The notes below the pieces were generated by a model. It made no database searches and was not told the origin of the DNA. It was given only the letters and a program-made list of their open reading frames with translations. The translations under genes were made by a program, and so were the position numbers. From Sminthopsis crassicaudata (lineage: Eukaryota), in NCBI RefSeq assembly GCF_048593235.1, contig NC_133617.1:754536282-754573896 (forward strand): DNA of 37,615 bases. The letters run 5' to 3'. Position 1 is the stretch's first letter; every line of letters starts with the position of its first letter. Below are positions 292 to 36,649 of this stretch, one piece after another.

Positions 292-3200
292 CTGCCGACA
301 GAAAACAGACGATAACCTGCCTCAGAGGGGCCGGGACGGGCACCGGACCGGGGACTCCCAGGTGCCAATACTCGGCCCATCCATCAACCTCAGAGGGGGA
401 AGGGGGACTCTGGGATCACATGACTTATCCAGGGTCACCCAGCCTGTCCCAGGCGGGACTTGAATTCAGGGCTTTGGGGTTTCCAGCGCAGACAACTGCC
501 AAGCCCGCTCTCACCGTCCCACCAAACCCGAGAGTCCCGAGCGTCCGGCTCCCCGGGCGCCCAGCAGCACTCGGCGCTGCCCCATCACCCAGGTCACCCA
601 TCACCAACCTTCTTTCCAGCTTTGCCTTCAAACTGGGGCTTAATCTGGAAGCGGGCTCGGTCCTCCTCGGCCTCCTCCTCATCCTCGCTGCTCTCAAAGA
701 GTTTCCCGGAGGCTTTAGAATCCTTGAAAAACCCAAATGGCGATTACGGCTGCACTAAACCGCAAGGCTGGCAGTCACTAAGTCGTTACGTCCCAGAACC
801 CCCTCCCTACGGCTCCATCGCAGGCCAGCTGGCCAGAGAATTCGCCACATTAACTGCAGGGGCACGGGCAGGATCCGCACTCAGGTCTCCGGGCTTCAAG
901 GCCCGGCGGGGAGTCGCAGAGCCGAGACCACAGTTCAGTCTGGAAGGGGTCAGAGGGAGGACCCGAGGTCGCCCAGGCGCAGAGAGCAGGGAGCCGTGGG
1001 GGACGGCGGGCAGCCTCACTGGGAGGGGAGGTTCCCCAAAGGAGGGAGGCGATCCTCCAATGCCAGCAGAGAGCCGGCTGAACAGTGCCATAGACCGCCC
1101 GGGCAATGGGCGTCCCGCCCCGTCAGCCATGCCAGCCCTGGGAAGGAGCCGCCATGGTCACCTACTTGCTTGCCGCCACTGCCCGGAAGGGGCTTCTCAC
1201 AGGCGTCATCCCTCACGTCCGTCTCCTCTTCGCTGTCGGAGCTGAACAGGATGTGCGTCGGTTTGCTCACCGGCCGGCCGTCCTGGGGAGGCACAGAAAG
1301 CAGCAGAGAGGTCACAGCCCACCCCGAATCCGGACCGTAAGCAGGGGCCAGCGCGCCCGGACGGGGGGCACTATCTCTGCATCCGCTCATTAGCCGGCGC
1401 TCAGCTGTGCCAAGCCAAGAAAACCACTGGTCCCCTGGTGGCGAGGCCAGCGTGGGCAGAAATCCAGCTCGCCAATGCGCTTCAACCCCCCTGGGGAAGT
1501 ACGGGGGCTTTTGGGGAGAAAGCTTCTGCCCAGGCTCATGGGGAAGACGCTCACCAAGCCGGAGAGAGCGCTGTGCACCAGCTGCTTCTGCAGCTCCCGC
1601 GCTCTCTGCCTCTCCTCCAAGGCTGCCAAGCGCTTCTCGTTATCCTGAGAGGGCTTCTGAGGGCCGGCGGCCTCGGCGGGAGCATCACGTGGGCCTTCTG
1701 CATCCTTTTGGACCGTCCCTGGGGAGTCCTTCCCTGGCACACGAGAGGAGGCCCTGCCTGGAGGGGGCCCGAGGGTGACGGGATCGCCCCTTTCCCGGCG
1801 GGGGTCTCCCACTGCAGGGGCGCCAAGGCCACCATGCCCTCCGGAGTCCATCCTGCAAGTCTCTGCAGGAAGCCTCGAGGGCTTCTTGGCGCCCGACGGG
1901 GTCAGGCCAGAAGCAGAACCAGGGGAGGGGGAGGATCCAGCGCCAAGCTGCTGCTCTCCATTGGCTGCCCGCCTCCTTGGCGGGTTTTTAGGACGACGTG
2001 GAGAGCTGTTTGCCCCTTCTGCTTCCCTCCCATCTTGGGGCACGGACATTTCATTGCGGGAAGGAGTATTCAAATCAAAGGCTCGTTTGCCCAGGGTAGG
2101 AGACGCTGCCTGTTTCAGAGAATTGGGGGCTTTTGCGTGAGCAGTGATTTCGCCATTCGGAAGGGGTCTTGTTGGTGTCTCCCCGCCATAGAGCGCCCCC
2201 ACGCCTCTGAAAGCCTGAAACTTGGATTTCGGCGCACTTTCCTTCAGTGGGTTCTGGTCTCTGGCTTTCTCGTCCCCTTCTAAGAGAGAAGCCAGGATGT
2301 CCGTGGGATTGATGCACCGGGCCCCTTTAGGAGCTTTCTTAGTCTTCCGGGCAGAACCAGTGCCCTCTCCCTCAGGCAGCGCCCGCTTGGCCCGTCGGGC
2401 GCTCCCCCCGGGGCCCTCGGCGGCTTCGGTTGCCAGCTTTTCCAGGTCGGCCAAGGTGAGGTCCAGGCGGTAGCAGTTGGTCATCATGGCTTCGTAGTCC
2501 AGATCCTCCTCAGACTCGCCACCCTCGGATCCAGGGGACGCGCCCCCTGGCTTTTTAGTGACGCGCCTCGAACAATCGGCTGCCTCCCTTTCGTCACTCC
2601 CACAGGTAGCGCGGGCACGCTCTGTTCCGTTTCTCACGGAGGCCTTCGCTTTTGCTTTGGGTTTCTTTTTTGGCGACGTTTTTGGCTCGTCTTTGCTCTG
2701 GTCGCCATTTTTCCTGCAGGCAATGATTTCGTCTGTGTCCCCCGAGTCGTACTCCTGGTCGTCTTCGGCAAGCTGAGCGGGACTGTCTGAGAGAGGGGCC
2801 CGGGGTCTTCCCCCTGCTCCAGGGGGGTTTGGCTTGAAGTCACAGCTGACCACTTCAAAGGAATCCCTCCCACTGCCGTTTGTCTCGGGGAGGCCGGGCC
2901 TTCGGGATTTCTCTTCTGCTATCATGGCTTTCAATTCTTCTTCAGAATCGACGTCGTCATCAGACGTGACGTTTCTGCTTCGGGCGCCGAGTGGCTTTGA
3001 CGCGTGAAGGGAGCCCGTTCGTGGCTTCAGGGCCTCCTTGGATGCGGCGGGCTGGGGACGGGGAGACGGCGGCTCAGGTCGTCCCGCGGCTCCGGAGGAG
3101 GGGCGGGGACTGCCCTCCACCTTTGCTCTCTTCGCGGGGTGGCTTCTGAAGGCAGGGAACTGTCCTTGTCGCTTCTTACTCATCGCGTCCTCTCCCCCTT

Positions 3201-6200
3201 CCAGTTTCCAAGTGAGGTCAGAGATGGAGACGGGATCTGCGACGTCTTGCTCAAACTTCTTGAGGTTGTGGCAATATTTTGACGGATCGTATTTTAAGAT
3301 GTTGGGAAAAGTTAAGGTACAAAACAAAAGTCATTTAGCAGGAAAACATTCTACAAAACCGGTACAGAGGGGGCCCTGAGCCGGGATTCTGGGGCCCTCG
3401 TTTGCTCCTCTGGAAAGCGAGCGATTTAAGCGAGGTGATTCTGGGATCCTTCGTTACGTTCCTAACGTTTTACAGTCTGCACGGGGCAGGGCTCCGGCTC
3501 CACTGTCAGCCAGCAGCGACCGCTCTGGCTTGGGGGAGGGTGACTCAGACCCCAGCACCCCCCGACGGCCCCGTCTGAGCTCCCAAGGGAACGTTCCCAC
3601 CTCGAGAGGGCGCACTGTGAGGCCCGGGGTCCCACGAGACTCTAGCCAATGGGATGGATCCCCAAAGCACTTCCTAGTTTATCCCTAGATCACCTCCCCA
3701 AGTTAACACGGAAACGGGACCAGGGGAGACGAGCCGGCGCCTCTGTAACCAAAGCCGGGCCTTCCGTCCCGCCAAGCTCAGGTCCCGCGGCCCAAGGCTT
3801 CTCTCACAGCCGCGCCTGCCCCGGGCGCCCTGCGGGGCCATGCAGGGCCCGGGCCCGGGCTCAGACCGAGGGGAGGCCCGAAGGGAAAGGATATCTTGCG
3901 CCGGTTCTGGCTCCTCAGGTGAAGGACGGGCAGAACTCGCCCAAACTTGCTCACGACCCAGTCCTGCGGCAGAAGGGAAACGGCGGATGAAGCAATGTCG
4001 GGGACACCGACACACAGGCCGGCGACTGGGGGCCGATGGGGGGGAGGGGGGGGCCTGGCTGTGGGATGGGGACCCCGCCCCCGCCCCGTCTCCCACACCT
4101 GCCTTGTGTCCCGGCACCTCGGTTCCCGGCACGGCTTTTTTCATATGGAGCTCCAGGACTGTGGGCGGGTTGACTGTGCTGCCCCCTTGTGGGCAGGCCT
4201 CCTGCTGCGCTTTGGCTCTAAGCCTCTCCTCTGCCAGCCTGAAACCCAGAATGCCAACCAGGGCGCCAGAGTAACCCCTGTGCCCTGGGCAGGAGAGGGG
4301 GCAGCTCAGTACCCAGGGTGCCAGGTGCGTCCTGCCCCCTGACCTCTCTGGGGCACCCGCTCACTGCCCCCCCCCCCCCCCGCTGCGGTGAGCTCTCTGG
4401 TGACGACGTCCCCCGTCCCCAGCGGCGGTGCCCCCGTACCTGTGCAGGAAGCTCTCTTTGGCCAGCTGGACCTGCAGGGTGCCGCCTTTCCACGTGGTCT
4501 TGTTTAAAGCGGACATACCTGCGGAGCAGAACCGGCCTTCCTTTGTGCCCGCCCCAAGGGGCGCCCCCAGCTGGCGCGCCAAGCACAAGGTTTAGTCACA
4601 TCAGAGCCGTGCCCCGCGTGCCGCTCCTGGCTCTGCTGATTCCCGGGCCCTTGCTTTCTGCGCCCCCCCCCCCATCCTCTTACGTCGGGGTCTTCAGAGG
4701 TGGAACCAGACCCCGCCCCAGATGTGGCCCGGCCTCCGCCCCCGGACCCTCAGATCCCGCCAGTGCGAGGCAGCGGAGCCTGGCTACGGGCCCGGCCTCG
4801 TGGGGTCTGCCCGCCCGGACCTCGAGCCCTGTCTGGGGCGGGGGCGGGGACTCACGAGCCCATCCCCCTCAAGTCACCCCGTGACGGGCCCCAGGCCCTG
4901 AGAGAGCCGGCCCGTGGGCCCCCACTGCGTCCCTGCGAGGGGCCTTTCCCTCTAAGAGTCCCCCCGACACGGAGCGAGGGGAGAGGACGCCGCACTCACA
5001 CTTCTTCAGGTCCCCGTCGGACAGGCGCACGTTGGCGTAGGCGAAGGTCTTCTCCGGGAGCCCTGGGAGCGAGCGGCAAACGCGGGGTCAGAGCCGGGTC
5101 ACGGGGTGGGGGGGGGCAGAGAGAGCACTTAGCAAAGGGTGGGCCAGGGCAGCACTCGCAGGGAGCACTCAGAGTGTGGGCAAGGAGGGCCCGGGGTGAG
5201 GGTGCAGGGAGAGCTGGAGGAGCACTCGGGGAGCACTTGGGGAGCACTGACAAGGAGGGCCTGGGGTGAGGGTGCAGGGAGAGCTGGAGGAGCACTCGGG
5301 GAGCGCGGGCGAGGAGGGCCCGGGGTGAAGGTGCGGGAAGAGCTGGAGGAGCACTCGGGGAGCACTGACAAGGAGGGCCAGGGGTGAGGGTGCAGGGAGA
5401 GCTGGTGGAGCACTTGGGGAGCATTCGGGGAGTGTGGGCAAGGAGGACCCTAGGTAAGTGTGGGGGAGAGCTGGGGGAGCACTCAGGAAGCATGGACAAG
5501 GAGGACCCAGGGTGAGGGTGCAGGGAGAGCTGGAGGAACACTCAGGGAGCACTGACAAGGAGGGCCTGGGGTGAGGGTGCAGGGAGAGCTGGAGGAGCAC
5601 TCAGGAGCGCGGGCAAGGAGGGCCCGGGGTGAGGGCGCAGGGAGAGCTGGAGGAGCACTCGGGGAGCACTCAGGGAGTGTGGGCAAGGAGGGCCCGGGGT
5701 GAGGGTGCAGGGAGAGCTGGAGGAGCACTTGGGGAGCACTCAGGGAGTGTGGGCAAGGAGGACCCCGGGTAAGTGTGGGGGAGAGCTGGGGGAGCACTCA
5801 GGAAGCATGGACAAGGAGGACCCAGGGTGAGGGTGCAGGGAGAGCTGGAGGAACACTCAGGGAGCACTGACAAGGAGGGCCTGGGGTGAGGGTGCAGGGA
5901 GAGCTGGAGGAGCACTCGGGGAGCACTCAGGGAGTGTGGGCAAGGAGGGCCCGGGGTGAGGGCGCAGGGAGAGCTGGAGGAGCACTCGGGGAGCACTCAG
6001 GGAGTGTGGGCAAGGAGGGCCCGGGGTGAGGGCGCAGGGAGAGCTGGAGGAGCACTCGGGGAGCACTCAGGGAGTGTGGGCAAGGAGGGCCCGGGGTGAG
6101 GGTGCAGGGAGAGCTGGAGGAGCACTCGGGGAGCACGGACGAGGAGGGCCCGGGGTGAGGGTGCGGGGAGAGCTGGAGGAGCACTCGGGGAGCACGGACG

Positions 6201-7678
6201 AGGAGGGCCCGGGGTGAGGGTGCGGGGAGAGCTGGAGGAGCACTTGGGGAGCACGGGCAAGGAGGACCCCGGGTAAGTGTGGGGGAGAGCTCGGGGAGCA
6301 CTCAGGGAGCATGGACAAGGAGGACCCAGGGTGAGGGTGCAGGGAGAGCTGGAGGAGCACTCGGGGAGCACAGGCGAGGAGGGCCCGGGGTGAGGGTGCG
6401 GGGAGAGCTGGAGGAGCACTTGGGGAGCACTCAGGGAGTGTGGGCAAGGAGGACCCCGGGTAAGTGTGGGGGAGAGCTGGAGGAGCACTCGGGGAGCACT
6501 CAGGGAGTGTGGGCAAGGAGGGCCCGGGGTGAGGGTGCAGGGAGAGCTGGAGGAGCACTTGGGGAGCACTCAGGGAGTGTGGGCAAGGAGGGCCCGGGGT
6601 GAGGGTGCAGGGAGAGCTGGAGGAGCACTTGGGGAGCACTCAGGGAGTGTGGGCAAGGAGGACCCCGGGTAAGTGTGGGGGAGAGCTGGGGGAGCACTCG
6701 GGGAGCACTCAGGGAGTGTGGGCAAGGAGGGCCCGGGGTGAGGGTGCAGGGAGAGCTGGAGGAGCACTCGGGGAGCACTCAGGGAGTGTGGGCAAGGAGG
6801 GCCCGGGGGTGAGGGTGCAGGGAGAGCTGGAGGAGCACTTGGGGAGCACTCAGGGAGTGTGGGCAAGGAGGGCCCGGGGTGAGGGTGCAGGGAGAGCTGG
6901 AGGAGCACTTGGGGAGCACTCAGGGAGTGTGGGCTAGGAGGACCCGGGGTAAGTGTGGGGGAGAGCTGGGGGAGCACTCAGGGAGCATGGACAAGGAGGA
7001 CCCAGGGTGAGGGTGCAGGGAGAGCTGGAGGAGCACTCGGGGAGCACGGACGAGGAGGGTCTGGCTGGGGGAGAACATGCAGGAAGGCCCTGGTGTGGGC
7101 TCCCAGAGGGGTCAGAGGTCAGCCTCCAGTTGGAAGCCAGGAGGGAGAGCCCAATAAGGGCTGACCTGGCCCTGCCCGCTCCTCCTAGGGGCCAGGCCAG
7201 GGACACTGCTCTCCTCACCCTCAGATCTTCCCACAGAAAACCCAGGAAGCAGCAGGCGCTTAATAGCTGCTTGGGGCGGGGCACCGTGGGCATGCATTTA
7301 GCGCCTGCGGTATGCCCCAGGCGCCGGACAGGCTCCCTCCCCAGATCCTAACCTTGCTCTGGGCACACAGCAGGCACTCAGTAAGTGCACACACACCAGC
7401 ACCAACATCTGACAGGAAGAGCTCGGAAGGGGCGGGGAGGGGCCCTACGGAACCCCGAGGGGGGGAAGGGGCCGAATGGGGATCCCAGCCCGGTGACGGC
7501 CCCAGCGCTGGGCTCCCGCTCCCTTCCCTTTGGTCTTACCGAGCTCATTGACCCGGGACACGAGCTCCACGGAGGACACGGCCCCGAAGCGGCCCAGCTG
7601 CGCGCGCACATCGTCCTGCGTGACCGAGGGCCCGAGGCCGCCCAAGAAGAGCCGCCGTTCTCCGGGACTCGCAGCCAT
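201..7678 (-). CDS. NOL8: Nucleolar protein 8, 3'-partial multi-exon CDS: complement(join(201..291,609..722,1166..1282,1555..3300,3895..3963,4103..4238,4440..4518,5000..5062,7540..7678)); continues beyond position 1
   Basis: Spliced translation gives the N-terminal RRM (RRLFLGGLG...KTFAYANV...LNKTTWKGGTLQVQLAKESFLHR), then AVPGTEVPGHK, WVVSKFGRVLPVLHL, KYDPSKYCHNLKK, YDSGDTDEII, DNEKRLAALEER and LQSHFGADDRFRMDARFLE, all recognised from NOL8. Exon phases join in frame (2554 nt). Confidence 0.96.
609..722 (-). CDS. NOL8: NOL8 exon (114 nt)
   Basis: tttttcaag|GAT; DSKASGKLFESSEDEEEAEEDRARFQIKPQFEGKAGKK; donor AAG|GTTGGT. Confidence 0.92.
1166..1282 (-). CDS. NOL8: NOL8 exon (117 nt)
   Basis: cag|GAC; DGRPVSKPTHILFSSDSEEE...GGKQ, matching the remembered KPTHIIFGSDSE motif; donor CAA|GTAGGT. 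Confidence 0.9.
1555..3300 (-). CDS. NOL8: NOL8 large exon (1746 nt)
   Basis: Part of ORF 1390..3327: ILKYDPSKYCHNLKK...VHSALSGL; starts after the AC acceptor; donor TTG|GTGAGC. Confidence 0.95.
3301..3894 (-). other. NOL8: U12-type (minor spliceosome) AT-AC intron, 594 nt
   Basis: 5' end ATATCCTTT; branch site CCTTAAC at 3317-3311; 3' end ttttcccAAC|. Removing it joins RRK|ILKYDP in frame. Confidence 0.95.
3895..3963 (-). CDS. NOL8: NOL8 coding exon 5 (69 nt)
   Basis: cag|GAC TGG; DWVVSKFGRVLPVLHLRSQNRRK; followed by ATATCCTTT (U12 donor). Confidence 0.94.
3964..4102 (-). other. NOL8: GC-AG intron, 139 nt
   Basis: AAG|GCAGGT...cag|GAC; required to keep the HK|DWVVSK frame. Confidence 0.85.
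4103..4238 (-). CDS. NOL8: NOL8 coding exon 4 (136 nt), ends at a GC donor
   Basis: cag|G CTG GCA GAG; LAEERLRAK...HMKKAVPGTEVPGHK. Only AAG|GCAGGT keeps the frame into the next exon. Confidence 0.9.
4440..4518 (-). CDS. NOL8: NOL8 coding exon 3 (79 nt)
   Basis: cag|GT ATG TCC; (C)MSALNKTTWKGGTLQVQLAKESFLH(R); donor AG|GTACGG. Confidence 0.95.
5000..5062 (-). CDS. NOL8: NOL8 coding exon 2 (63 nt)
   Basis: cccag|GG CTC CCG GAG AAG ACC TTC GCC TAC = (G)LPEKTFAYANVRLSDGDLKK; donor T|GTGAGT. Confidence 0.93.
5150..7060. repeat. G-rich minisatellite, ~59 and ~70 bp units, roughly 30 copies, in NOL8 intron 1
   Basis: 70-bp unit GGAGTGTGGGCAAGGAGGGCCCGGGGTGAGGG(T/C)GCAGGGAGAGCTGGAGGAGCACTCGGGGAGCACTCAG; the 59-bp variant lacks TCAGGGAGTGT. 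Periodicity is directly visible at 5941-6240. Confidence 0.97.
7540..7678 (-). CDS. NOL8: NOL8 first coding exon (139 nt), RRM N-terminal half
   Basis: ACCATGG Kozak at 7678 (a second in-frame ATG at 7684); MAASPGERRLFLGGLGPSVTQDDVRAQLGRFGAVSSVELVSRVNEL; donor G|GTAAGA. Confidence 0.92.
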
Positions 7679-7719: not shown

Positions 7720-8150
7720 TCCGAGACACGTGCTTCCGACTTCCGGTCACGTGGGTGCGCAGCTGTCCGTTCTCCCTCTGCCCCGCGAGCGGGACCCGGG
7801 TTCCCGCATGCAAAGTTCCGGGACTCTGTTTCCGCCCCGTCGATCTCTCCGGTTCCGGACTATGTCCCTGTCCTCTTTGCCTCTGGTCTGGGGTCTCTGT
7901 CGCGACTCGTGGTGATGGACCGAAGTCACTTGTCTGCTAAGTTAGGGAGCCCTCGGACGTCAGCCGAGCTCGGGTATCTAGGGGGAAGCAAAATAAAGCG
8001 ACACAACCTTCCTCTTTCCCCAACTGCGTCTCAACTTCCTGCTGGGGTTCATTAATCCCGCCTCCTCAAAGACGCGCATGCGTATATCAAGTTGTTGAAG
8101 CTTTTATTTCCCTCCCCCCCCCCCGTGCCAGACTCTGACGTCACTCAAGG
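7720..8150. promoter_or_regulatory. Bidirectional CpG-island promoter of NOL8/CENPP
   Basis: Lies between divergent ATGs (7678 minus, 8456 plus). E-boxes CACGTG at 7727-7732 and 7748-7753, ETS ACTTCCGG at 7739-7746, NRF1-like CGCGCATGCGTA at ~8073-8084, CRE TGACGTCA at 8136-8143; CpG-dense. Confidence 0.75.
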
Positions 8151-8455
8151 ACCAGCTCCAAAGTAAACTGGTCCTTCAGGAGGGGGGTTCAGGAGCCACG
8201 GGTCGCCGGATATTCGCTCCCCAGCCTGGGTGACGGATTCTCCGGGGAGAGCGGGCTCATCGTTATGACTCTGTCCCGGCGCCGTCTCTGATAACTCTGG
8301 GATGGGTGGTCTCGACCAGGCCCGCGCCGCCCCAAGCGCCGTCTCCCCCCCAAAGCTGAGAAGTTGGTATGTGCCGGCAGCGCGCGGGAGCCTTGAACAG
8401 CTGGGCTCTGGCGCGCGCCGCCCCCGCCCCCTGTCCCTCAGAGGCTGTGGCAGAC

Positions 8456-8733
8456 ATGGAAGAGGAGCGGCGGCGGCGGGAGCGGCAGGAGCGGCGGCTG
8501 GAGCGGCGGCGTCGGCGGCGGGAGCAGCTGCTGAAGGAGCAGCGGCAGCGGCAGCAGCAGGAGGAGCGGCGGGAGCAGCGGCGGCAGGAGGAGGAGGAGC
8601 AGCGGCGGCGGGGGCAGCGGCTGAAGCAGCAGCAGGAGCTCCGGGCCCTGCGGGCTGAGGTCGCCGCGCTGCGCAGGCGCCTCGAGCAGGGACGTCCTGA
8701 AGCCGACCCGGTCCCGGACCCGGACCCGACCCT
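8456..8733 (+). CDS. CENPP: CENPP coding exon 1 (278 nt) with E/R/Q-rich N-terminal extension
   Basis: GACATGG Kozak; ...QQELRALRAEVAALRRRLEQ...; phase-2 donor CT|GTAGGC. Confidence 0.85.
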
Positions 8734-11700
8734 GTAGGCCCCGGTGGGGGGGTGCGGCAGGCGGGGGAGGGGCTCGGGGGCGGGAGCTGAGGGGAAGGCG
8801 TGATTGGCGGCTGACGGAGTGGGGGCAGGGAGTTCCGCAGGATGCCTCCTGTGATGTGGGGGGAGGGGCTGTGGCCCCCCTGTGCAGTGGCCCGAGGGGA
8901 TGGGGACCTGTCATGGCCCTTCGTAGTCCGCAGAGCCTGATGGGAAGCTGGAGGGAGAGCCGGGGAGGGGCGGAGAGGGGGCGAGGGTGCTGGGGGAGGG
9001 GCGTCCCCCAGCCTGCCCCTGTGGAGGGCACACTGCGCACTGACACCCAGAGCGTGCACTCTCACAGGACTCCAAGCGCGCGCTGCCGGGGGCCGGGAGG
9101 CTCTGGGAAGGGAGGCCGGTGGCGAGTTCTCCCTCTGAGTCACCGTCCTCCCCATTCCAGACGGTTCTGCCAGGAAGGCCCCCCGCCCCCCGCGGGCCCC
9201 GCGGAGTCTGGCAGCGCCTCGGAAGCCCGGCTCGGGCGCCTGGAATCCGGCGTGTCCTTCCTCTCCAAGCTCACGGGCATCCGGGTGACGGAGTACTCCC
9301 TGAGCAGGGCCGAGCTCCGCGGAGGCGCGGAGGGTAAGCTGCGCTCTCTCCATCCGGCCTCTGGGAGCCTCGGGCTGGGAGCCGGGGTCACTTCCGGCGC
9401 GGCCCCTCCCCCCGGGTCACCGAGGCCCTTGGGGAGGGACCGGGGGAGAGTCGTCTAAAGGGGGGGGGCTCCTGCGGGAAACGTTTCCTGGGCTGGGTGA
9501 GGGTCCGGTCCGGGCCGAAGGTTCAAAGGGAAGGAAAGCCGCCTCAGCCGGGCCTGGGAAAGTCCATCGGGTGCCCCGGGGCAGGAAAAGGGGCAAGAGC
9601 CGGCCGCCTCACAGCCCCGCCCCCCAGAGCGTGGTGGGAGGAGACAGGAGACCACCCGCAGAGGGGGGGGCGTGCAGACCAGGCCCCCCCCCCAAGGCCT
9701 TGGGCGGTGGCACGAGGAGCATGCCCCCCAGGGGCGCCGTGCCATCGCCTGGGTGTGGGGGGTGACTGGGCGGCTGCCTCCTGAGCTGGGGCCCGAGGTC
9801 TCGCCCGCTGACCGAGGGCTATGGCGTCTCCACCGCCTCTTCACGCACCCTCTGACCGCTTTTCCCTGGGCGCGTCCTCGGGAAGAAGTGCCATAAGTAC
9901 CACGGGGGGAGGGGGGGTGACCACAGGAAGCGCCTGGTGTGTGCCAGGCATGGAGCCCCATTCCAGGGGCACTTCGGGAGGGCGGCCCAGCGTCCCCCCG
10001 TCCCCCCCCCCCTGTCCCCCTCATCGCTGACGCTTGCGTCTCTTCCGTGTCACAGACGGGCCCAGGATCCTGAGGAAGGGCCGCCTGGCCGGACACTGCC
10101 GAGATGTGACCTTTCACCTTGAGTTCCAGCTCCTGGAGATGCAGGTGAGTGTCGGGGCCACGCCCTGCCCCCTCCCCCCATCCACAGGTCCTTTGTCTCC
10201 CCCCCTCCCCACCCCCCCCTTGGATGCCTTTCCCCACTTCCGGGAGGGGGCAGCCTAAAGAACTGGCTCCTCTGGGGCGAGGAAGAAGCCCAAGTAACTG
10301 GAACGAGGAGAAATCAGGGGAGGCTTCTTGGGGGAGGAGGCCTGTGAGCTTGAACCAAGTCTAAGGATTCCCATTGGGACACGAGTGCGAGAGCAAGGAG
10401 CCTCTGCTCCTCCCGGCGCCGGCTGGCGTTTACGGAGCGCCCGAGGGGGCGAGACGTGTCTATGAGCCCATTTTACAGAGGAGGCGCCGAGGCAGGCAGA
10501 GGTCAAGGGCCTGCCTGGTCTCTCTGGTGGCTTGTGGAGGGGGCAGTGGGAGGGGGCCCTGGACCCCTGGAGCCACCACAGGTGGGAGAGATCGGGGGGA
10601 GGACGCAACCGGGGGACCAGCCAGACTTTCCCGCCATCACCTCATTTGGGGCCAGGCTGCGCAGAGCAGCACGTGGTGGGGCTGCAGGGGCCCCGGCCTC
10701 CTGCTGGGGGCATTGTCAGGCGGCCGGCCCGTGGGGGTCTGAGGCTGCTCCTCCAGGGTCCCCGGCCCGGCGGGTCTCTGACGCCTCCAGCACTTCCTGA
10801 GCCGGGGCTGATGACATCGGCCCACGGGAGCCCTCAGGACATTGTGCCAGCTGCAGGGGGGGGCACTTTCCCCACCCTCTTTTTGCCCGACACCAGCTGT
10901 GCAGGTTCATAAGCTAAGTGCACAAATTGAGCGCTTACCGATGATAAATTGTGACATCGCGACCCCCACGTTCAGTTCCAAGACCCAAGAAGCTGGGTTT
11001 AGAGGATGACCTCGTCCTGGGAGGAGAGAAAGGGGGACATCGCGCAGCACGTGGCGTGGCTGATGCGCTGGGACAGGGGGCAGGCCCAGGGCACAGGTGA
11101 TCTCCAAGTGCCTGGGCCTTGGGGGCCAAGGCCCCGGACAGCGGGCATGGCAGCAGCCCTGGCTGTGGGGGGCTGAGTGGGCGGAGCCTTGGGGGTCTGG
11201 GGGGTGCTGTCCTGCAGTGGCCGCCAGAGGCAGCCCCTGGGTTTCTTAGCCGTCGGCCACCAGCAGAGGGAGGCCTTTCATCATTGGAAATCTGAGAAGC
11301 AGCCCGAGCTTCAGCTGCGCCCAGAGATGTCAGGGCGTCCCGGAAGCGCTGCCGGGAACCTGAGGGGCCAAAAAGACTTAACCAGCCGGAGCCAGAGAAA
11401 GCTCCAGCGTCGTCGCTCTCTTCCTACAGAGGAGGAAACTGAGGCGCCCAAGGCTGCTCACACTGCCAGCCCTGTCCTCTGGCCCCCTGGCACATGCCCA
11501 GGGTGGGTTCTGCTCTTAAGGATGCCTCCAGGACCCTCCTCTGAGGCCCAGCACCCTGAGCACCACTGCTCCTTGGGACCCAGGCCCTCTGGGCAGAAAG
11601 GGAAGACCAGGAGCCACGCCCAGCCCCAGAGTCCGGAGTCTAGAGCTCTAGAGGGCAAAGCCCCGGGGCCCAGAATCTAGAGCCTCAGAACCCCAAAGCC

Positions 11701-14700: not shown

Positions 14701-17700
14701 GAACTTTGCATTGAGAAGAGAAGCTCTAACGTGCTTTGACACAGTCAGTCCAAAAGCATTTATTAAGCCCCTGCTGTGTGATGCCTGGTGCTAAGAGATC
14801 AGGGCCCAGAGGAAGGCAATGAGACAGGACAGGCCCGCATCTCCCAGCTCTATGAACACCTGATGGCCGGCAGTTCCCACGGTGACGGGTTTATAACCTA
14901 TGGATGAGCTTTCGTGGTCTCTTTCCCACTTTTTCTCCTCTTAAAGCAGCGACGACCAGCTTCGTACTGATTGCCCAACAGCCCGTGGCCCGAGAAAAAA
15001 GTGGCCGTTTCTGGAAAGACTTTGTGTCCGATGGGGATCTAAGCCGGGTCTTAGGAGGGGAGATGGGAAAGAAGCAACAGGTGTTCCAGATATTACTGGT
15101 GGTGCCAAAGGTGGCAAAGGGTTGGGGGTCTCGGGAGTAGGGGGAGTATCAGAGGAACTCGGCAGGAAGGGCGTGGGAGTCATGGCAGGGCCTTGGACGC
15201 CAGCAGTCAAGGCCTCCTTGGAAGGGAAGTAGGCCCAGGGAGATGGGCCGGGGGTGGGGAGCCACCAGATTGTTCTGGGGGTGGTGGAGGTCGCTCTGTG
15301 GGATGAGAAGAGGTGGCCCCTCCAGCTTGGGAGGTAAAGGGGGTCCAAGTGCGTGCGGCGAGCCGGGGGTGCAGAGGACAGGGCAGAGAAAATAGGCGGG
15401 CCCTGAGAGCTCCCTGGGCCAACAAAACAGCCTTTCTCTGCTACCAGCTGGGCGTCACACCAAGCACTGAGGGTCCTTGCCCTCAAGGACTTTGCAGTCT
15501 GTCGGGCAGGGGGCACCAAGTGACGGACCCTTCCTGAACCTGAGTGGAAGTGGAGAAATGCATTTGTCGTTTCTGAGCGCCTGGTTTTAGACACTTCTCG
15601 GGATGGAATCCTTCGTCATGAATTCCCCAGGGAGGGGCGGGGATCCTGCCAGTGGGTCCGCGTTCAGTTAAAAGGTCTTTGCACGGCTTCTCTGCTTTAG
15701 GATGAAGAGAACCCCTCGGCTGCCATCACCGAGCTGAACATTATCCTGGAGCCCATGGAGTACAGCGAGCTGAGCCGCTTTGTGGCCCGGTAAGACCCTT
15801 GACCAAGGCTAACTCCCCGAGGGAAGCCCCGTCCCTTTCTTTGACTGCAAGGTGGGGTAGATGGAGGCGCTTTTAAGTGACTTGTGTGGGCCCCTTTGGC
15901 TCCTGCCCTTGCCGTCGTATCTCTCCCCTGCCCTCCTTTAGAGCAAAGATTTTCTTTCTTTTTACCCGTTTCCGCGGATGTCTTTTTTTCACCGTCAGGA
16001 CTTCCCCAGTAGCCTTCCTCCGGCCCTCCCTGAGGGCCTTCTCTGTTTTGGAAGACAGAAAGATCAAGCTGGCTGGTGGAGGGGCACCACGTGGGGGCTG
16101 CCCCTGCCCCTGTACCCCTTTGGGACAGTCTCTCTTGACCGCATCAGACAGTCCTACCCTTGTTCCTCCCTCGGCTTCTTCCCAGCCTCTCGATGTCCGT
16201 CATTGCCCTTCCTGACAACCCCGCGCTGCTCCCTCCCCTCTCGGACCACATGGGAGCATCTCTGCGTCCAGCTCTTGACCATCACAAAGGTGCTGCTGCA
16301 GTGCCTGGGCACAAGGGGCATGATTCTTTTTAATGGCCATAGAGGGCTTTATCTGCACCCTCCCAAACCACTTCCGGGTCATTTGTGCTGATTGGCAGCT
16401 GTGCCCAAAATGCACCAGGGCCCTTCTCCCATAGTCTCCCCAACATTGACAGTCGCCATGCTCCGTCATCTTTACCAGTCTGTAGCATGGGGACCTCAGG
16501 GCTGTTTTAATTCGTCTTCTCTTGTGACGGACGGCTTGGAGCTCCAATGAGGAGACGAGATGACATCCCTCTCTCCTGCACCCAAATTGGCCTCAGAGGC
16601 TTGCAGCGGCCTGAGAGGAAGGGATCCCGAGATTAAGTCCGTTTATAGAGTTAGAAAAGCAAACGGAGATCAGCTGAGCAGCAAGCCTTTATTAAGTGCC
16701 TACTGTGTGCCAAGCATTCAGGTGTGCTGAGAGAGGCTTGTCCATGGCTACCCCCCAGGGGGACAGGTCTTTCTGAGTGCGGGCCCATCTGCCCCAGACA
16801 CTGCCCAGCCCTCTGCTCTCACCCGCCCCCCGGCCCCACAGACCCTGTGATGTCTTCTGGGGTCCCTTACAAGGGGTGCCTTTGCCCAGGCCCCTGGGAC
16901 CCTTTATGTCAGTGCAGGGTCCAGGGATGGGAAGGCACGCTTGATCTGGGGGGCCCAGGGAGGATTCGGAAGGAGAGGAGGGCCACGTTGGCTGGGCTGT
17001 ATGGCATGTCTCCCCAGGGCGCTGTGAGGGTGTCCGGTGAGGTGCCCTTTAACCTTCTCTCTGCGGGATTAGGGGCAGGAGCTGCTGCCAAATCTGGCCT
17101 TGGGCACTGAAGAGCCATGTGACCTGGAAGAAATCACTTACCCCTGCTTGCCTCAGTTTCCTCTTCTGTAAAATGGGAATAACAGCACTAGCCTCCTATT
17201 CGCTCCTTGTTTGTCCTTCATTGGCAAGGAGGGCCATGGCATTGGGGAGGTGATACCGGGACAGGAGGGCAGGGCTGGTCAAAGTCACTGACCTCCCTGC
17301 CTCCTCCAGAGCCAGACACAGATCTGGGCAATGGAGATGGCCCTGGATGGGGGGAGACCCTGGCCTTGTGAAGCAGGTCCCTGTTTGTCTGAGGGGCCTG
17401 ATCCAGGATTAAGGCCAGGTAAGATATGAGATGGAGGAAGACTTCTTGTACTTTGTCTCTCTGNNNNNNNNNNNNNNNNNNNNNNNNNNNNNNNNNNNNN
17501 NNNNNNNNNNNNNNNNNNNNNNNNNNNNNNNNNNNNNNNNNNNNNNNNNNNNNNNNNNNNNNNNNNNNNNNNNNNNNNNNNNNNNNNNNNNNNNNNNNNN
17601 NTCAGGATTTCTGGCTATTGACATTGACCCTGCCCAGCTGGGGCTTGGCCTGGAACCCATTTCTGGTTAAGTAACAAGAGCCAGACGATTGGTCCTTCAG

Positions 17701-20700: not shown

Positions 20701-21032
20701 ACTTCCCAGATGTTCACAGTAGACTGCCTGACTGTGCCATGCGCCCGTTGGCGCTGCCTTGGGGCTTGTTCTGGGGCCATACTTTGGTACAATCATTCCA
20801 TTGCTTTTGGTTTCATTTATTTGTTGTTGTTGTTTTTTTTTTTTTTCCTTTTATACTTTTCTAGTTGTTGCATATATTATTTTCCTGATTATTGCTATTT
20901 CTGGGCCTTGCTCATCAGAGATTTTATTTCTATAGGACAGAAGAGACGCGGGACCTTTTCCGGTTTTTCAGAAGCCTTCACTTTTTCCTGCAGTGGTGCG
21001 AATACCGTAAGCGGACATTTCAGTACTTCAAG
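8456..21032 (+). CDS. CENPP: Centromere protein P, 3'-partial multi-exon CDS: join(8456..8733,9161..9333,10056..10144,15701..15789,20936..21032); remaining exons beyond the window
   Basis: Spliced translation gives LRALRAEVAALRR, LGRLESGVSFLSKLTGI, VTFHLEFQLLEMQ, AITELNIILEPMEYSELSRFVAR and DLFRFFRSLHFFLQWCEYRKRTF, all recognised from CENP-P. Phases are consistent, and exons 3-5 are 89/89/97 nt, as recalled for human. Confidence 0.95.
9161..9333 (+). CDS. CENPP: CENPP exon 2 (173 nt)
   Basis: ccattccag|A; ...ARLGRLESGVSFLSKLTGIRVTEYS...; donor G|GTAAGC. Confidence 0.92.
10056..10144 (+). CDS. CENPP: CENPP exon 3 (89 nt)
   Basis: cacag|AC; GPRILRKGRLAGHCRDVTFHLEFQLLEMQ; donor CAG|GTGAGT. Confidence 0.94.
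12870..12935 (+). mobile_element. L2/MIR-type 3' tail remnant
   Basis: CCTGGCATGTAATAGAGACTTAATAAGCGTGAGTTGACTTGA resembles the remembered tail cctggcacatagtaggcacttaataaatg. Similar tails lie on the minus strand near 14740-14795, 16675-16720 and 18105-18145. Confidence 0.55.
13879..14349 (-). mobile_element. Possible L1/HAL1 ORF1 C-terminal domain-derived fragment (open 156-aa frame)
   Basis: RAKLAFTLTRDQSNWFPADPCLREFV loosely resembles the remembered L1 ORF1p CTD PAKLSFISEGEIKYFIDKQMLRDFV. By-eye match only. Confidence 0.3.
15701..15789 (+). CDS. CENPP: CENPP exon 4 (89 nt)
   Basis: ctttag|GAT; DEENPSAAITELNIILEPMEYSELSRFVA(R); donor CG|GTAAGA. Missed by the ORF track. Confidence 0.94.
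16265..16490 (-). mobile_element. Decayed L1 ORF2 3' fragment
   Basis: Minus strand cagactggtaaagatgac...tgtcaatgttgggg...gtgcattttgg...gcagcagcacctttgtgatggtcaagagctgg follows the remembered L1 3' pattern (cagattggctaagatgac / aaatgttggagg / atagcagctctttttgtggtggcaaagaattgg). Confidence 0.65.
17085..17195 (+). mobile_element. MIR-family SINE core
   Basis: tgtgacctggaagaaatcacttacccctgcttgcctcagtttcctcttctgtaaaatgggaataa matches the MIR core. Confidence 0.8.
17208..17450 (+). mobile_element. Marsupial-type RTE-related SINE (WALLSI/RTESINE-like; family and orientation uncertain)
   Basis: ttgtttgtccttcatt...gggaggtgat...aaagtcac...ctcctccagagcca...ggagatggccctggatg...ggagaccctggcc...gattaaggccaggtaaga matches a marsupial repeat as I remember it. 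Confidence 0.6.
17464..17601. other. Assembly gap (138 N) in CENPP intron 4
   Basis: Run of N. Confidence 1.
19490..19670 (+). mobile_element. MIR-family SINE (core plus tail)
   Basis: gacctagggcaag...ctgcctccgtttcctgagctgtaaaatgggaatt...gttgtgag...gagatagtatttgtaaagcg. Confidence 0.75.
20285..20715 (+). mobile_element. Decayed L2 3' fragment
   Basis: aaactccaggaggtccctttggcc...ctctggttggctttcaggaccctt... followed by the tail gggcctagtacagagcaggcactt; L2 3' pattern. Confidence 0.5.
20936..21032 (+). CDS. CENPP: CENPP exon 5 (97 nt)
   Basis: tatag|G; TEETRDLFRFFRSLHFFLQWCEYRKRTFQYFK; donor AAG|GTAAGG. Confidence 0.95.
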
Positions 21033-22569: not shown

Positions 22570-22895
22570 TAGGTGAGGGCTCCCTCTGCATACAATCACT
22601 GGGCTCCCTCCGTATTGAGGAGCTTCCATGTGTACGATCTCTGAGCGTCCATTACGTTTGATAACTTCTCTGTGTACAATCTCTGGATTCCCGCCATGTT
22701 TGATAGATTCTCTGTGTACAATCTCTGGACTCCCGCCATGTTTGATAGATTCTCTGTGTACAATCTCTGGACTCCCGCCATGTTTGATAGATTCTCTGTG
22801 TACAATCTCTGGACTCCCGCCATGTTGGGGAGCTTTTCTGTGTATAATCTTCGGACTCCCGCCGTGTTTGATAGATTCTCTGTGTATGATCTTTG
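22570..22895. repeat. 42-bp tandem repeat, ~7-8 copies, in CENPP intron 5
   Basis: Unit ATGTTTGATAGATTCTCTGTGTACAATCTCTGGACTCCCGCC at 22696, 22738 and 22780; diverged copies at 22612, 22654, 22822 and 22864. Confidence 0.95.
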
Positions 22896-23019
22896 GAAAG
22901 ACTTGGAAAAGAATCACAGAGAACTGGAGGGCATGAATGGCACAGGGTCTCCACTGCTTAGAGGCTGAAACCACATGTACACTGGAATATATTCCAAGTG
23001 TTCTGATCGGCGTTAAGGC

Positions 23020-34974: not shown

Positions 34975-35288
34975 TTAGTAGAAGTAAGGATCCAAGTTCT
35001 CCTGGGTTCTTCCCCGCTCCTGCCCTTCAGGCTCATTCCCTTCTCCATCTCCTTCTTCTTCTTCTTCTTCTTCTTCCTGAAACCTGCGGAACACTTGGGT
35101 CCTCAGCAGTATCATTTGCCCATTGGGCTTTCTTTGTTCACCGTAATAAATGCTGTGGATGTAAGGGAAGCAGAAGAACACGTAGGAACTAATGGGTTCT
35201 TTTAGCCTGTTTTGGTCCAGACGAATGTAGGTTAAGTGATGGTAATGCATCGGGTCAATTCGGGGGCACATCCGGGTGACATTTATGT
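34975..35288 (-). CDS. OMD: OMD last coding exon (314 nt including TAA)
   Basis: (Y)[20 protein letters not shown]...[12 protein letters not shown]...LDPYFY*. Confidence 0.96.
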
Positions 35289-36649
35289 CTGTAAAGTAAA
35301 AACAGAGAGTTAGCATCCCCAAGGCCCCGATTGTCACTGCAAACCCATCTAAGGACATATCTGGGGTTACACTTAAATACCTCCCCCAGGGAGTGACGCT
35401 TCGACCATTAGCAGCGGCTATACCAGCTACAGCGAGCCCTTGGAGAAGTCATGGTTCAATTGTCTTTCAAGTGAATCAGAGAAAGGGAAGTTAAGCAGTG
35501 ACAGGATTTCGGCATGCCGAAGTCTATAGAGGAGAGTGCCATTTAGCAGAAAGGATCGTTGTTTTTACTTCTAGTCAGGAGCTGTTGTGGTTGCACATAA
35601 TTTCAGCCTCTTCCCGCCCAGGTCCTACCAGCAGCTGTACGTGAGGATCAGAGCTCATTCACTGTTGGAGCCCCCCCCCCCCCCAAGCCCCTGTGTAAAA
35701 AGTTTTACGTACATTCGATGTCGTTGTCTTGCATGTACAGATGTTGCAGGCTTCTCGGGATGTAGAACGCTTGCTTCAGTTTGTTGTGGCCCACGTTGAG
35801 CTCTATGAGGCTGGAAATGTTAAAAACGTCATAGGGAATTTCCCGCAGGCTGTTGGACGACACTCTTAAAGCGAGAAGCTTGGGGAACTTTTGGAAGTAA
35901 TTGTCCGGGATGAGAGAAATGGAATTATTTTCTAGAGAGAGATGCATGAGCGAGGAAGGTAAGTCCTGAGGCATCGACTCCAATCTGTTGCTACCTAAAT
36001 TGAGTTGCACCAGTTTGCTCGTGTGGGCAAAGTTTTCTCTTAAGGAAGAGTCTTGAAGCCGATTGTGGCAGAGGTCCAGCATAGTTAGATTCATTAATCC
36101 TGCCATGGCATTCGCCTCCACTCTGGAGATCTCATTGTAACCAAGAAGAAGTTTTTCTAAAGAATTCGGAAGAGGAGATGGGAAGTCTTCTATGTCGTTA
36201 TGATCCAGATGCAGCTGTAAGAGATTGGAAAGCTTTTCAAACACGCCGTGTTCGATCTGGTGAGACTTGATCTTGTTGTGGCCAAGGTTGATTTCCTTCA
36301 GGTTGGAAGCATTGGCAAACGGATGGGCCGTCACGGCTTCTATTTCATTGAACTGGAGATAGAGCTGTTCGATGTGCTTCGGGATCTTTGGGATCGTTTT
36401 GAGCTTGCGGTTGTCACAGTACATGGCGGATGGAAAGGTCAGGGGACAGAAGCATTCCACGGCACAGCCGAGGGGATTTCGGTGAGGGGAAATGTCGTAA
36501 TCTCGGTCGGAATGAAAATAGAACGCGGGTGAATATTCGTCATCGGCCTCTTCGTCATAGTCTTCATCCATCTGGTACATGGCATATTGACAATACACGG
36601 TGACTTTGAAAAAGCAGAAAGCGATCCAGAGTCGACCGAGAAGACTCAT
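34975..36649 (-). CDS. OMD: Osteomodulin/osteoadherin (class II SLRP), complete CDS, 416 aa: complement(join(34975..35288,35713..36649))
   Basis: Signal peptide; Tyr/acidic N-terminus; [17 protein letters not shown] (CX3CXCX9C); LRRs; [28 protein letters not shown]; acidic tail; phase-1 intron 35289..35712 (T|GTACGT...acag|AC). Confidence 0.97.
35713..36649 (-). CDS. OMD: OMD first coding exon (937 nt CDS)
   Basis: ORF 35705..36649 up to DNDIE; acceptor ccattag| at 36661, 11 nt before the ATG, implies an upstream non-coding exon. Confidence 0.96.

What the first reader, a model, noticed from the sequence alone, without database searches (positions are those of the whole stretch)
8456..8640. 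CENP-P carries an apparently obligatory ~57-aa Glu/Arg/Gln single-alpha-helix-like N-terminal extension built from triplet repeats
Seen: the only ATG in frame within the exon-1 CDS is at 8456 (GACATGG, strong Kozak). It is followed by MEEERRRRERQERRLERRRRRREQLLKEQRQRQQQEERREQRRQEEEEQRRRGQRLKQQQ before the conserved ELRALRAEVAALRR. The exon is 92 codons, against ~35 recalled for human (MDAELAEVRALQAEIAALRR...), and there is no Met where the human protein starts. The DNA is a mosaic of CGG/GAG/CAG triplets, suggesting slippage expansion. Known: alternating E and R blocks are the signature of stable single alpha-helix (ER/K) domains, such as the one in INCENP. Inference: a lineage-specific ~8 nm rod was added to a CENP-O/P/Q/U/R kinetochore subunit, may be length-polymorphic, and could alter kinetochore contacts.
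Basis: partly seen in the sequence, partly recalled or inferred. Interest (0 to 1): 0.72.

Follow-up and report, generated by a model that had tools for sequence, protein, structure and literature searches.

The report
Dasyurid CENP-P charged N-terminal extension
The fat-tailed dunnart's kinetochore protein CENP-P carries a 60-residue Glu/Arg/Gln stretch after its start codon, made by triplet-repeat growth and shared at very different lengths with antechinus and Tasmanian devil; it is probably a tolerated helical tail with no shown function.

Summary

The window is Sminthopsis crassicaudata. The database CENP-P model P0041 (369 aa) matches window exons 1-5 at 100%.

The extension is a dasyurid trait:
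- The leader before the conserved helix is 60 aa in dunnart, 55 in Antechinus and 154 in Tasmanian devil.
- It is 8-12 aa in diprotodonts and Dromiciops, 6 in eutherians and 11 in a bird.
- The bilby has a different, independent repeat expansion.

The upstream peptide shared with Dromiciops shows that 8456 is the ancestral start. The tract therefore grew inside the coding sequence. Codon use (22 of 23 Arg = CGG; 58 of 60 codons end in G) points to DNA-level repeat growth.

AlphaFold2 predicts one long helix (pLDDT 97-98). The charge pattern is a weak single-alpha-helix signature, no better than shuffles and almost Lys-free.

My best reading is a real, translated, largely tolerated low-complexity helical tail. 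A functional rod is possible but unshown. The models are already in RefSeq, and I found no paper on the feature. No RNA or DNA from relatives could be obtained.

The parts
8074..8143 (.). Probable core of the shared NOL8/CENPP bidirectional CpG-island promoter: NRF1-like GCGCATGCGT (8074-8083) and a perfect CRE, TGACGTCA (8136-8143)
   Evidence: Read directly. Function is inferred from the motif consensus only.
8265..8291 (+). Short upstream ORF (8 codons). It matters only if transcription starts upstream of it.
8302..8658 (+). Out-of-frame upstream ORF (118 codons, context GGGATGG) that overlaps both CENP-P start candidates. It would inhibit translation if it lies in the mRNA, which argues for a transcription start downstream of 8302.
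   Evidence: The conclusion is an inference.
8369..8455 (+). Upstream in-frame segment (29 codons) used as the N-terminus by the database model P0041. It is homologous to a 24-residue upstream in-frame peptide in the Dromiciops model. It may be 5' UTR or an alternative N-terminus.
   Evidence: AlphaFold2 pLDDT is 48-55 over residues 1-20.
8456..8458 (+). Conserved start codon, with A at -3 and G at +4. Antechinus and devil models start at the equivalent MEE. It is positionally orthologous to the canonical Met of Dromiciops.
8456..8635 (+). E/R/Q-rich extension, 60 codons (23 R, 15 E, 14 Q, 4 L, 2 K; net charge +10), built from CGG/GAG/CAG codons.
   Evidence: Predicted helical with pLDDT 97-98.
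8636..8733 (+). Conserved CENP-P N-terminal amphipathic helix (ELRALRAEVAALRRRLEQ) plus a Pro/Asp-rich linker, to the exon 1 donor (CT|GTAGGC).
9161..9333 (+). CENPP exon 2. It contains LESGVSFLSKLTGIRVTEYS, which matches human CENP-P residues 57-89.
10056..10144 (+). CENPP exon 3
15701..15789 (+). CENPP exon 4
20936..21032 (+). CENPP exon 5. This was the query that retrieved the orthologues.

Best explanation
This is exon 1 of CENPP in the fat-tailed dunnart (Sminthopsis crassicaudata). The 60-residue Glu/Arg/Gln tract is real coding sequence.

Origin. The tract arose in the dasyurid lineage by in-frame growth of GAG/CGG-type triplets, with CAG and occasional TGG as one-step derivatives. The growth began just after the ancestral start codon, inside a short leader that was already E/R/Q-rich (about MDREREEQQQ in other Australian marsupials). 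It has kept changing in length since: 55 aa in Antechinus, 60 in dunnart, 154 in Tasmanian devil.

Translation. It is translated from ATG 8456. If the mRNA reaches that far upstream, it may also be translated from ATG 8369, which adds 29 more residues.

Structure. The tract probably forms a charged alpha-helix continuous with the conserved N-terminal helix. That helix sits on a flexible tail that the solved human structures probably do not model.

Function. Most likely it is a tolerated, nearly neutral low-complexity expansion that acts at most as a passive spacer, not a new functional module.

Shown: sequence, frame, gene identity, taxonomic distribution and codon signature. Inferred: translation start, helicity in solution and neutrality.
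For: Identity. P0041 (S. crassicaudata CENP-P) is 100% identical to window exons 1-5. Pfam CENP-P scores E 2e-74. The fold matches human CENP-P chains at TM 0.84-0.88. NOL8 lies head-to-head and OMD is nested antisense.

Distribution. Leader lengths are given and the alignment.

Ancestral start. Dromiciops and dunnart share a homologous upstream in-frame peptide that ends directly at their respective Met-Asp/Glu starts. The tract therefore lies downstream of the old ATG.

Age and constraint. The proximal ~45 residues are alignable in all three dasyurids. Dunnart-Antechinus identity is 41/55 (75%) in the tract against 85% in the rest of the protein, with one 5-residue indel.

DNA-level origin. 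Arg is CGG in 22 of 23 tract codons, against 2 of 6 in the rest of exon 1 (Fisher p = 0.003) and 7 of 17 in exons 2-5. In the tract 58 of 60 codons end in G.

Helix. AlphaFold2 gives one helix over residues 23-107 of P0041 with pLDDT 97-98, and over residues 2-172 of the devil protein. Only 4 Leu occur in 60 residues, so there is no heptad seam.

Tolerance.
- N-terminally GFP-tagged human CENP-P still localises to kinetochores (PMC6162344).
- Solved human chains model only 219-233 of 288 residues.
- The bilby independently expanded a different N-terminal repeat.
- Net charge is not conserved: +10/+11 in dunnart and Antechinus, -5 in devil.
Against: No RNA, CAGE, ribosome or peptide evidence could be obtained, so neither the start codon nor translation of the tract is directly shown.

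All orthologue proteins are computational gene models. The two devil models disagree (400 vs 438 aa).

Sequence conservation of the proximal part across dasyurids (75%) and the conserved MEE start could reflect purifying selection, and hence function, rather than neutrality. I could not compare it with a neutral DNA rate, because relatives' DNA was not retrievable.

AlphaFold2 tends to draw confident helices for E/R/K-rich low-complexity sequence.
Confidence: 0.7

Rival explanations
1. One reading: a functional single alpha-helix (ER/K-type) rod. The tract would be a stable monomeric helix of about 9 nm (about 23 nm in the devil) that acts as a spacer or tether and repositions the CENP-P N-terminal helix within the kinetochore.
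For: - AlphaFold2 predicts a continuous helix with pLDDT 97-98 in dunnart and above 90 in devil.
- 67% of residues are charged and 23% are Gln, with no hydrophobic seam.
- The length falls in the 40-200 residue range reported for such helices (PMC5347031).
- The devil tract shows charge patterning above shuffles (opposite minus like pairs p = 0.009; 6-9 residue band p = 0.015).
- INCENP offers a precedent for such a helix in a centromere protein (PMC4571873, listed).
Against: - Dunnart and Antechinus tracts have only 0.48 and 0.33 opposite-charge i+3/i+4 pairs per residue, with nearly as many like-charge pairs. Neither exceeds shuffles (p = 0.18 for both). Ideal patterns give 1.3-1.6.
- Arg:Lys is 23:2, and Arg-only designed repeats aggregated instead of forming single helices.
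- A 2.8-fold length difference between dasyurids argues against a tuned spacer length.
Confidence: 0.18
2. An added electrostatic binding or targeting tail. The Arg-rich tract, including a six-Arg run, would bind microtubules, DNA or RNA, or act as a nuclear or nucleolar targeting signal. It would be analogous to the basic N-terminal tails of CENP-Q and NDC80.
For: Net charge is +10 in dunnart and +11 in Antechinus. The basic, disordered CENP-Q tail in the same complex binds microtubules (PMC6162344).
Against: The devil tract has net charge -5, with runs of up to ten Glu, so positive charge is not conserved. The tract is predicted helical rather than disordered. No binding data exist.
Confidence: 0.07
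3. The tract is not translated. It would be 5' UTR or a gene-model artefact, with the true protein starting at a non-AUG codon near the conserved helix or coming from an alternative transcript. One candidate route uses the GTATGT donor-like site at 8367.
For: - GC-rich triplet repeats stay open in several frames, so an open frame alone is weak evidence (one search shows ORFs in other frames and on the other strand).
- All evidence is from predicted models.
- GC boxes at about 8420-8435 could place a transcription start near or beyond 8456 (inference).
- One devil model (P0001) enters the tract from a different first exon.
Against: - The ATG and the frame are kept in three dasyurids despite a 5-residue and a ~94-residue indel.
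- ATG 8456 has a strong context and is positionally orthologous to the canonical start of Dromiciops.
- No in-frame ATG lies between it and the conserved helix.
- The ancestral marsupial leader is already a short version of the same composition.
Confidence: 0.05

Closest known systems
CENP-P (Pfam PF13096; human CENP-P in CENP-OPQUR/CCAN structures 7PB8, 7QOO, 7R5V, 7XHO)
   Same: Same gene. It has the Pfam domain, the tandem RWD fold, the conserved N-terminal amphipathic helix (ELRALRAE[IV]AAL), and the same neighbours: NOL8 head-to-head, with small leucine-rich proteoglycan genes nested antisense.
   Different: Between the start codon and the conserved helix there are 60 residues (89 from the upstream ATG). 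Eutherians have 6 and other Australian marsupials 8-12.
Dasyurid CENP-P models already in NCBI/UniRef (Sminthopsis P0041, Antechinus P0040, Sarcophilus P0039 and P0001)
   Same: They carry the same tract. P0041 is identical to the window.
   Different: They are uncurated predictions that differ in start codon (8369-type vs 8456-type) and, for the devil, in tract length. I found no paper that describes the feature.
ER/K single alpha-helix domains (myosin-6/10, INCENP coil; PMC5347031, PMC4571873)
   Same: Highly charged E plus R/K composition, no hydrophobic seam, length over 40 residues, and a predicted long isolated helix.
   Different: It is almost Lys-free and 23% Gln. It has a weak i+3/i+4 salt-bridge pattern and a net charge of +10. 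It sits at the N-terminus rather than linking two folded domains, and it has not been tested biophysically.
Coding triplet-repeat expansions in GC-rich first exons (poly-Ala/Gln/Gly type tracts)
   Same: Uniform codon use, imperfect 3-nt periodicity, location in a CpG-island first exon, and large length differences between related species.
   Different: It is a three-codon mosaic (CGG/GAG/CAG) giving a mixed-charge tract, not a homopolymer. Pure runs in the dunnart are 4 units or fewer.
Greater bilby CENP-P N-terminus (P0007)
   Same: A marsupial CENP-P with an expanded N-terminal leader (73 aa) produced by tandem repetition in exon 1.
   Different: The repeated unit is the conserved helix motif itself (AELRAPRAEL-like), not E/R/Q codons. 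It is therefore an independent event.

Membership tests
CENP-P (PF13096) | Significant match to the Pfam CENP-P model | tested here: met
   P0041 is 100% identical to window exons 1-5. It matches PF13096 at residues 187-362, E 2.1e-74, 249.5 bits against a cutoff of 25. Exons 6-8, which encode most of the domain, lie outside the window.
CENP-P (PF13096) | Tandem RWD fold like solved CENP-P/Ctf19 | tested here: met
   The AlphaFold2 model of P0041 matches 7pb8_P (E 4e-24, TM 0.87 by target, 54% identity) and yeast Ctf19 chains.
CENP-P (PF13096) | Orthologous gene position | tested here: met
   NOL8 exons lie on the minus strand upstream. An OMD-like LRR gene is nested antisense at 34975-36649. 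The same neighbours (a >1000-aa upstream minus-strand gene, taken here as NOL8, nested LRR genes, Ins_P5_2-kin downstream) appear in the Antechinus and devil loci. The human arrangement is from my own knowledge.
CENP-P (PF13096) | Kinetochore localisation and assembly into CENP-OPQUR | not testable with these tools
   This needs experiments.
ER/K single alpha-helix (SAH) domain | Rich in E and R/K, at least ~40 residues, no hydrophobic seam | tested here: met
   40 of 60 residues are charged and there are 4 Leu, not in heptad register. The criteria are from PMC5347031.
ER/K single alpha-helix (SAH) domain | Dense opposite-charge pairs at i+3/i+4 (salt-bridge network) | tested here: inconclusive
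   The tract has 0.48 opposite and 0.40 like pairs per residue, against 1.34-1.62 and 0-0.25 in ideal repeats. It does not exceed shuffles (p = 0.13-0.18). The devil tract does (p = 0.009). No published predictor (Waggawagga, SCAN4CSAH) was available.
ER/K single alpha-helix (SAH) domain | Predicted or observed long isolated helix | tested here: met
   AlphaFold2 predicts a helix at 23-107 (pLDDT 97-98 over 31-80) in dunnart and 2-172 in devil. This is a prediction only.
ER/K single alpha-helix (SAH) domain | Monomeric, stable helix in solution (CD, AUC, non-cooperative melting) | not testable with these tools
   One caution: Arg-rich designed repeats aggregated (PMC5347031), and this tract is 23 R to 2 K.
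Coding triplet-repeat expansion | 3-nt periodic, codon-uniform DNA with length differences between relatives | tested here: met
   TRF result. CGG makes up 22 of 23 Arg codons and 58 of 60 codons end in G. Leaders are 55, 60 and 154 aa.

The most novel reading that the evidence does not exclude
The dasyurid CENP-P tract is an adaptive kinetochore innovation. On this reading it is a rapidly length-evolving charged helix that changes how the CENP-OPQUR module reaches microtubules, DNA or a partner. It might evolve under centromere-drive-type conflict, with devil, antechinus and dunnart each tuned differently.
Probability: 0.12. Interest if true: 0.65.

Novelty: new variant of a known kind. Interest (0 to 1): 0.36.

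Why it matters
CENP-P is a conserved inner-kinetochore subunit whose N-terminal tail is probably unresolved in the human structures. A family-wide extension of 55-154 residues, variable in length and predicted helical, in one marsupial family is a natural experiment on what that tail tolerates or does.

It also shows how GC-rich first exons generate new protein sequence by repeat growth downstream of a fixed start codon. The bilby provides an independent second case in the same exon.

On present evidence it is a modest curiosity rather than a new mechanism. The practical point for annotators is that the dunnart and Dromiciops models probably begin at a non-conserved upstream ATG, and that the two devil models disagree.

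Tried and rejected
Searches that gave nothing:
- Exon 1 alone against solved structures and Pfam matched only designed coiled coils and noise.
- The word-index protein search with the stop-free frame around exon 2 and with the exon 1 ORF returned nothing. This is because of the length window (the real protein is 369 aa) and because no unspliced ORF calls exist for this locus. A blank here says nothing about relatives.
- DNA of exon 1 from Antechinus and devil could not be fetched, because the gene range exceeds 100 kb. I therefore made no DNA alignment, no dN/dS estimate and no check of the upstream ATG in those species.
- No opossum or monotreme CENP-P appeared among the hits. Polarity rests on Dromiciops, diprotodonts, bilby, eutherians and one bird.
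- Literature searches found nothing on marsupial CENP-P N-termini. The monotreme paper mentions only expression.

Explanations considered and rejected:
- Assembly artefact. The tract is present in four independent assemblies of three species.
- Coiled coil. There is no heptad seam.
- 5'-UTR recruitment through a new upstream ATG. The upstream peptide shared with Dromiciops shows that the old ATG was retained.

Steps left out by rule:
Each exon was searched by reference, and full-length work used the database protein P0041.
- No contig taken for human was fetched.
- The N run at 17464-17601 was left untouched.

Full report
**What is in the window**

Positions 8456-8733 on the + strand form an open frame. 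It starts at ATG 8456 (context GCAGACATGG) and runs through 60 codons of Glu/Arg/Gln-rich sequence (window:8456-8635). It then encodes ELRALRAEVAALRRRLEQ and a Pro/Asp-rich linker, and ends at a GT donor after 8733. The tract has 23 R, 15 E, 14 Q, 4 L, 2 K and 1 G, with net charge +10.

Its 60 codons include 22 CGG, 14 GAG and 14 CAG, and 58 of 60 end in G. Tandem Repeats Finder reports imperfect 3-, 24-, 30- and 36-nt periodicity over 8463-8639 at 67-73% matches.

One point needs correcting. A second in-frame ATG lies at 8369, with no stop before 8456. The nearest upstream in-frame stop is at 8357-8359.

**Gene identity and species**

Exon 1 alone matches nothing in the PDB or Pfam. The frame continues cleanly into an exon at 9161-9333. 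Its product gave human CENP-P residues 57-89 as the only PDB hit. Further exons were recognised at 10056-10144, 15701-15789 and 20936-21032, all with canonical GT-AG borders.

Each was used by reference. Exon 5 (window:20937-21032) was searched against the 1.84-billion-protein representative library and returned 31 CENP-P proteins. Source names identified marsupial orthologues.

A word search with the devil protein then returned P0041, the CENP-P model of Sminthopsis crassicaudata. P0041 is 100% identical to the window over exons 1, 3, 4 and 5; the exon 2 hit is identical within the exon and drops to 88% only because it runs into the flanking intron. The window is therefore fat-tailed dunnart.

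P0041 carries Pfam CENP-P at E 2e-74. Its AlphaFold2 model matches human CENP-P chains at TM 0.84-0.88. NOL8 exons lie head-to-head on the minus strand, and an osteomodulin-like gene is nested antisense at 34975-36649. The Antechinus and devil loci have the same neighbours.

**Start codon**

P0041 begins at ATG 8369, not 8456. The Antechinus model (P0040) and the longer devil model (P0039) begin at MEE, the equivalent of 8456.

The Dromiciops model also begins at an upstream in-frame ATG. Its 24-residue peptide is clearly homologous to the dunnart's 29-residue one (MRRQRAGGLNSW vs MCRQRAGALNSW). That peptide ends directly at the Dromiciops canonical Met. This supports two conclusions:
- ATG 8456 is positionally orthologous to the ancestral CENP-P start.
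- The E/R/Q tract grew downstream of that ATG, inside the coding sequence. It was not recruited from 5' UTR by a new start.

ATG 8456 has the stronger context (A at -3, G at +4, against G at -3 and T at +4 for 8369). Two further upstream ATGs, at 8265 and 8302, are out of frame. The 8302 ORF overlaps both candidate starts. Efficient translation therefore suggests a transcription start downstream of 8302.

Whichever AUG is used, the tract is in the protein. No in-frame ATG lies between 8456 and the conserved helix. No RNA or ribosome data were available, so the start remains an inference.

**Taxonomic distribution**

I measured the length of the leader before the conserved helix motif (alignment):

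| Species or group | Leader length (aa) |
|---|---|
| Dunnart | 60 (89 from ATG 8369) |
| Antechinus | 55 |
| Tasmanian devil | 154 (68 in an older model that enters from another first exon) |
| Brushtail possum | 12 |
| Koala | 10 |
| Sugar glider | 10 |
| Tammar wallaby | 8 |
| Dromiciops | 10, from its canonical Met |
| Eleven eutherian models | 6 (a twelfth, Phyllostomus, did not match the motif) |
| Cormorant | 11 |

The short marsupial leaders already read like a seed of the tract, for example MDREREEQQQ. The bilby has a 73-residue leader, but it is built from repeats of the helix motif itself. That is a separate expansion in the same exon.

No opossum or monotreme sequence was recovered. 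On this sample the tract is a dasyurid character.

**Origin and evolution**

Within the tract, Arg is CGG in 22 of 23 codons. It is CGG in 2 of 6 codons in the rest of exon 1 (Fisher p = 0.003) and in 7 of 17 in exons 2-5. This uniformity points to DNA-level repeat growth.

CAG (Gln) and TGG are single-step derivatives of CGG at its CpG. The Trp residues seen in the Antechinus and devil tracts would be TGG. That would explain the Gln content, but it is an inference.

The proximal ~45 residues align in all three dasyurids. Dunnart and Antechinus share 41 of 55 residues (75%) with one 5-residue indel, against 85% for the rest of the protein. The devil has about 94 extra residues of (Glu 4-10)-Asp-Gln-(Arg 4-9) blocks inserted just after MEE. 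The tract is therefore old enough to predate the split of these genera, and it has kept changing in length. In the dunnart, pure triplet runs are at most 4 units, so large present-day polymorphism is not expected there.

**Structure**

With an 18-sequence alignment, AlphaFold2 predicts a single helix over residues 23-107 of P0041. pLDDT is 97-98 across the tract. A low-confidence linker follows at 109-140, and then the RWD body. In the devil the helix spans residues 2-172. Sixty helical residues correspond to about 9 nm, and there is no hydrophobic seam.

The salt-bridge pattern that defines ER/K single helices is weak:
- The dunnart tract has 0.48 opposite-charge and 0.40 like-charge i+3/i+4 pairs per residue. 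Ideal repeats have 1.3-1.6 and 0-0.25.
- Neither the dunnart nor the Antechinus tract exceeds composition-matched shuffles. The devil tract does.
- The tract is nearly Lys-free. Wolny et al. found that Arg-only designed repeats aggregated, and that the K:R ratio matters (PMC5347031).

I therefore rate 'helical' as likely and 'stable single alpha-helix rod' as unproven.

**Function**

The solved human chains contain 219-233 of 288 residues. From where the fold alignment begins, I infer that the N-terminal ~55 residues, including the conserved helix, are not modelled. Pesenti et al. 2022 list the CENP-P N-terminus among several candidates for an unassigned short helix near CENP-I/K (PMC9235857).

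N-terminal GFP-CENP-P localises to human kinetochores (PMC6162344). Additions at this end can therefore be tolerated.

The same paper shows that the basic tail of CENP-Q binds microtubules, which makes a charge-based role conceivable. But net charge flips from +10/+11 in dunnart and Antechinus to -5 in the devil. Together with the 2.8-fold length range and the independent bilby expansion, this favours a tolerated low-complexity expansion over a tuned module. The moderate sequence conservation of the proximal part keeps a functional reading open.

**Novelty**

The proteins are already in NCBI/UniRef as predicted models. I found no paper describing the feature. It is a new variant of a known protein family, of modest interest.

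That fits a general tendency and is not independent evidence.

**Limits**

- All orthologues are gene predictions.
- Relatives' DNA could not be retrieved because the gene ranges exceed 100 kb.
- No transcript or peptide evidence was available.
- No published single-alpha-helix predictor could be run.
- The N run at 17464-17601 was not examined in any other copy, and no human contig was fetched.

Noticed in passing
window 5181-7059: A large GC-rich minisatellite (70-nt unit, about 28 copies, 85% matches; also scored at 139-, 187- and 209-nt periods). It lies in the first large intron of NOL8 on the minus strand.
   Followed up: partly
window 1393-7640, minus strand: NOL8 exons lie head-to-head with CENPP. 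Recognisable pieces include MTMAASPGERRLFLGGLG, NKTTWKGGTLQVQLAKESFLHR, DWVVSKFGRVLPVLHL and a 646-codon open exon at 3330-1393.
   Followed up: partly
window 8074-8083 and 8136-8143: An NRF1-like GCGCATGCGT and a perfect CRE (TGACGTCA) lie between the NOL8 and CENPP starts. This is the likely core of the bidirectional promoter.
   Followed up: no
window 8302-8658: An out-of-frame 118-codon upstream ORF with a strong start context overlaps both CENP-P start candidates. An 8-codon upstream ORF lies at 8265-8291. Both matter only if transcription starts that far upstream.
   Followed up: partly
window 8367-8372: A GTATGT donor-like site overlaps the upstream ATG at 8369. Any use as a splice site is untested.
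   Followed up: no
window 34975-36649, minus strand: An osteomodulin-like leucine-rich-repeat gene (314-codon exon at 35705-36649, plus a last exon at 34975-35358 with a Glu-rich tail) is nested antisense in CENPP intron 5.
   Followed up: partly
window 22656-22897: A 42-nt tandem repeat (5.8 copies, 90% matches) lies in CENPP intron 5.
   Followed up: no
P0007 (Macrotis lagotis CENP-P), residues 1-85: The bilby CENP-P has an independent N-terminal expansion made of repeated AELRAPRAEL-like copies of the conserved helix motif.
   Followed up: partly
P0001 vs P0039 (Sarcophilus harrisii CENP-P): The two devil models from different assemblies disagree. One is 400 aa, starts MVKLFF and has a read-through C-terminus. 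The other is 438 aa, starts MEERRRR and has about 86 more tract residues. This suggests annotation or assembly trouble in the repeat.
   Followed up: partly
P0043 (Dromiciops) residues 1-24 vs window 8369-8455: The upstream in-frame peptide is conserved between Dromiciops and dunnart (about 14 of the first 18 residues). It may be a conserved 5'-leader element or an alternative N-terminus.
   Followed up: partly
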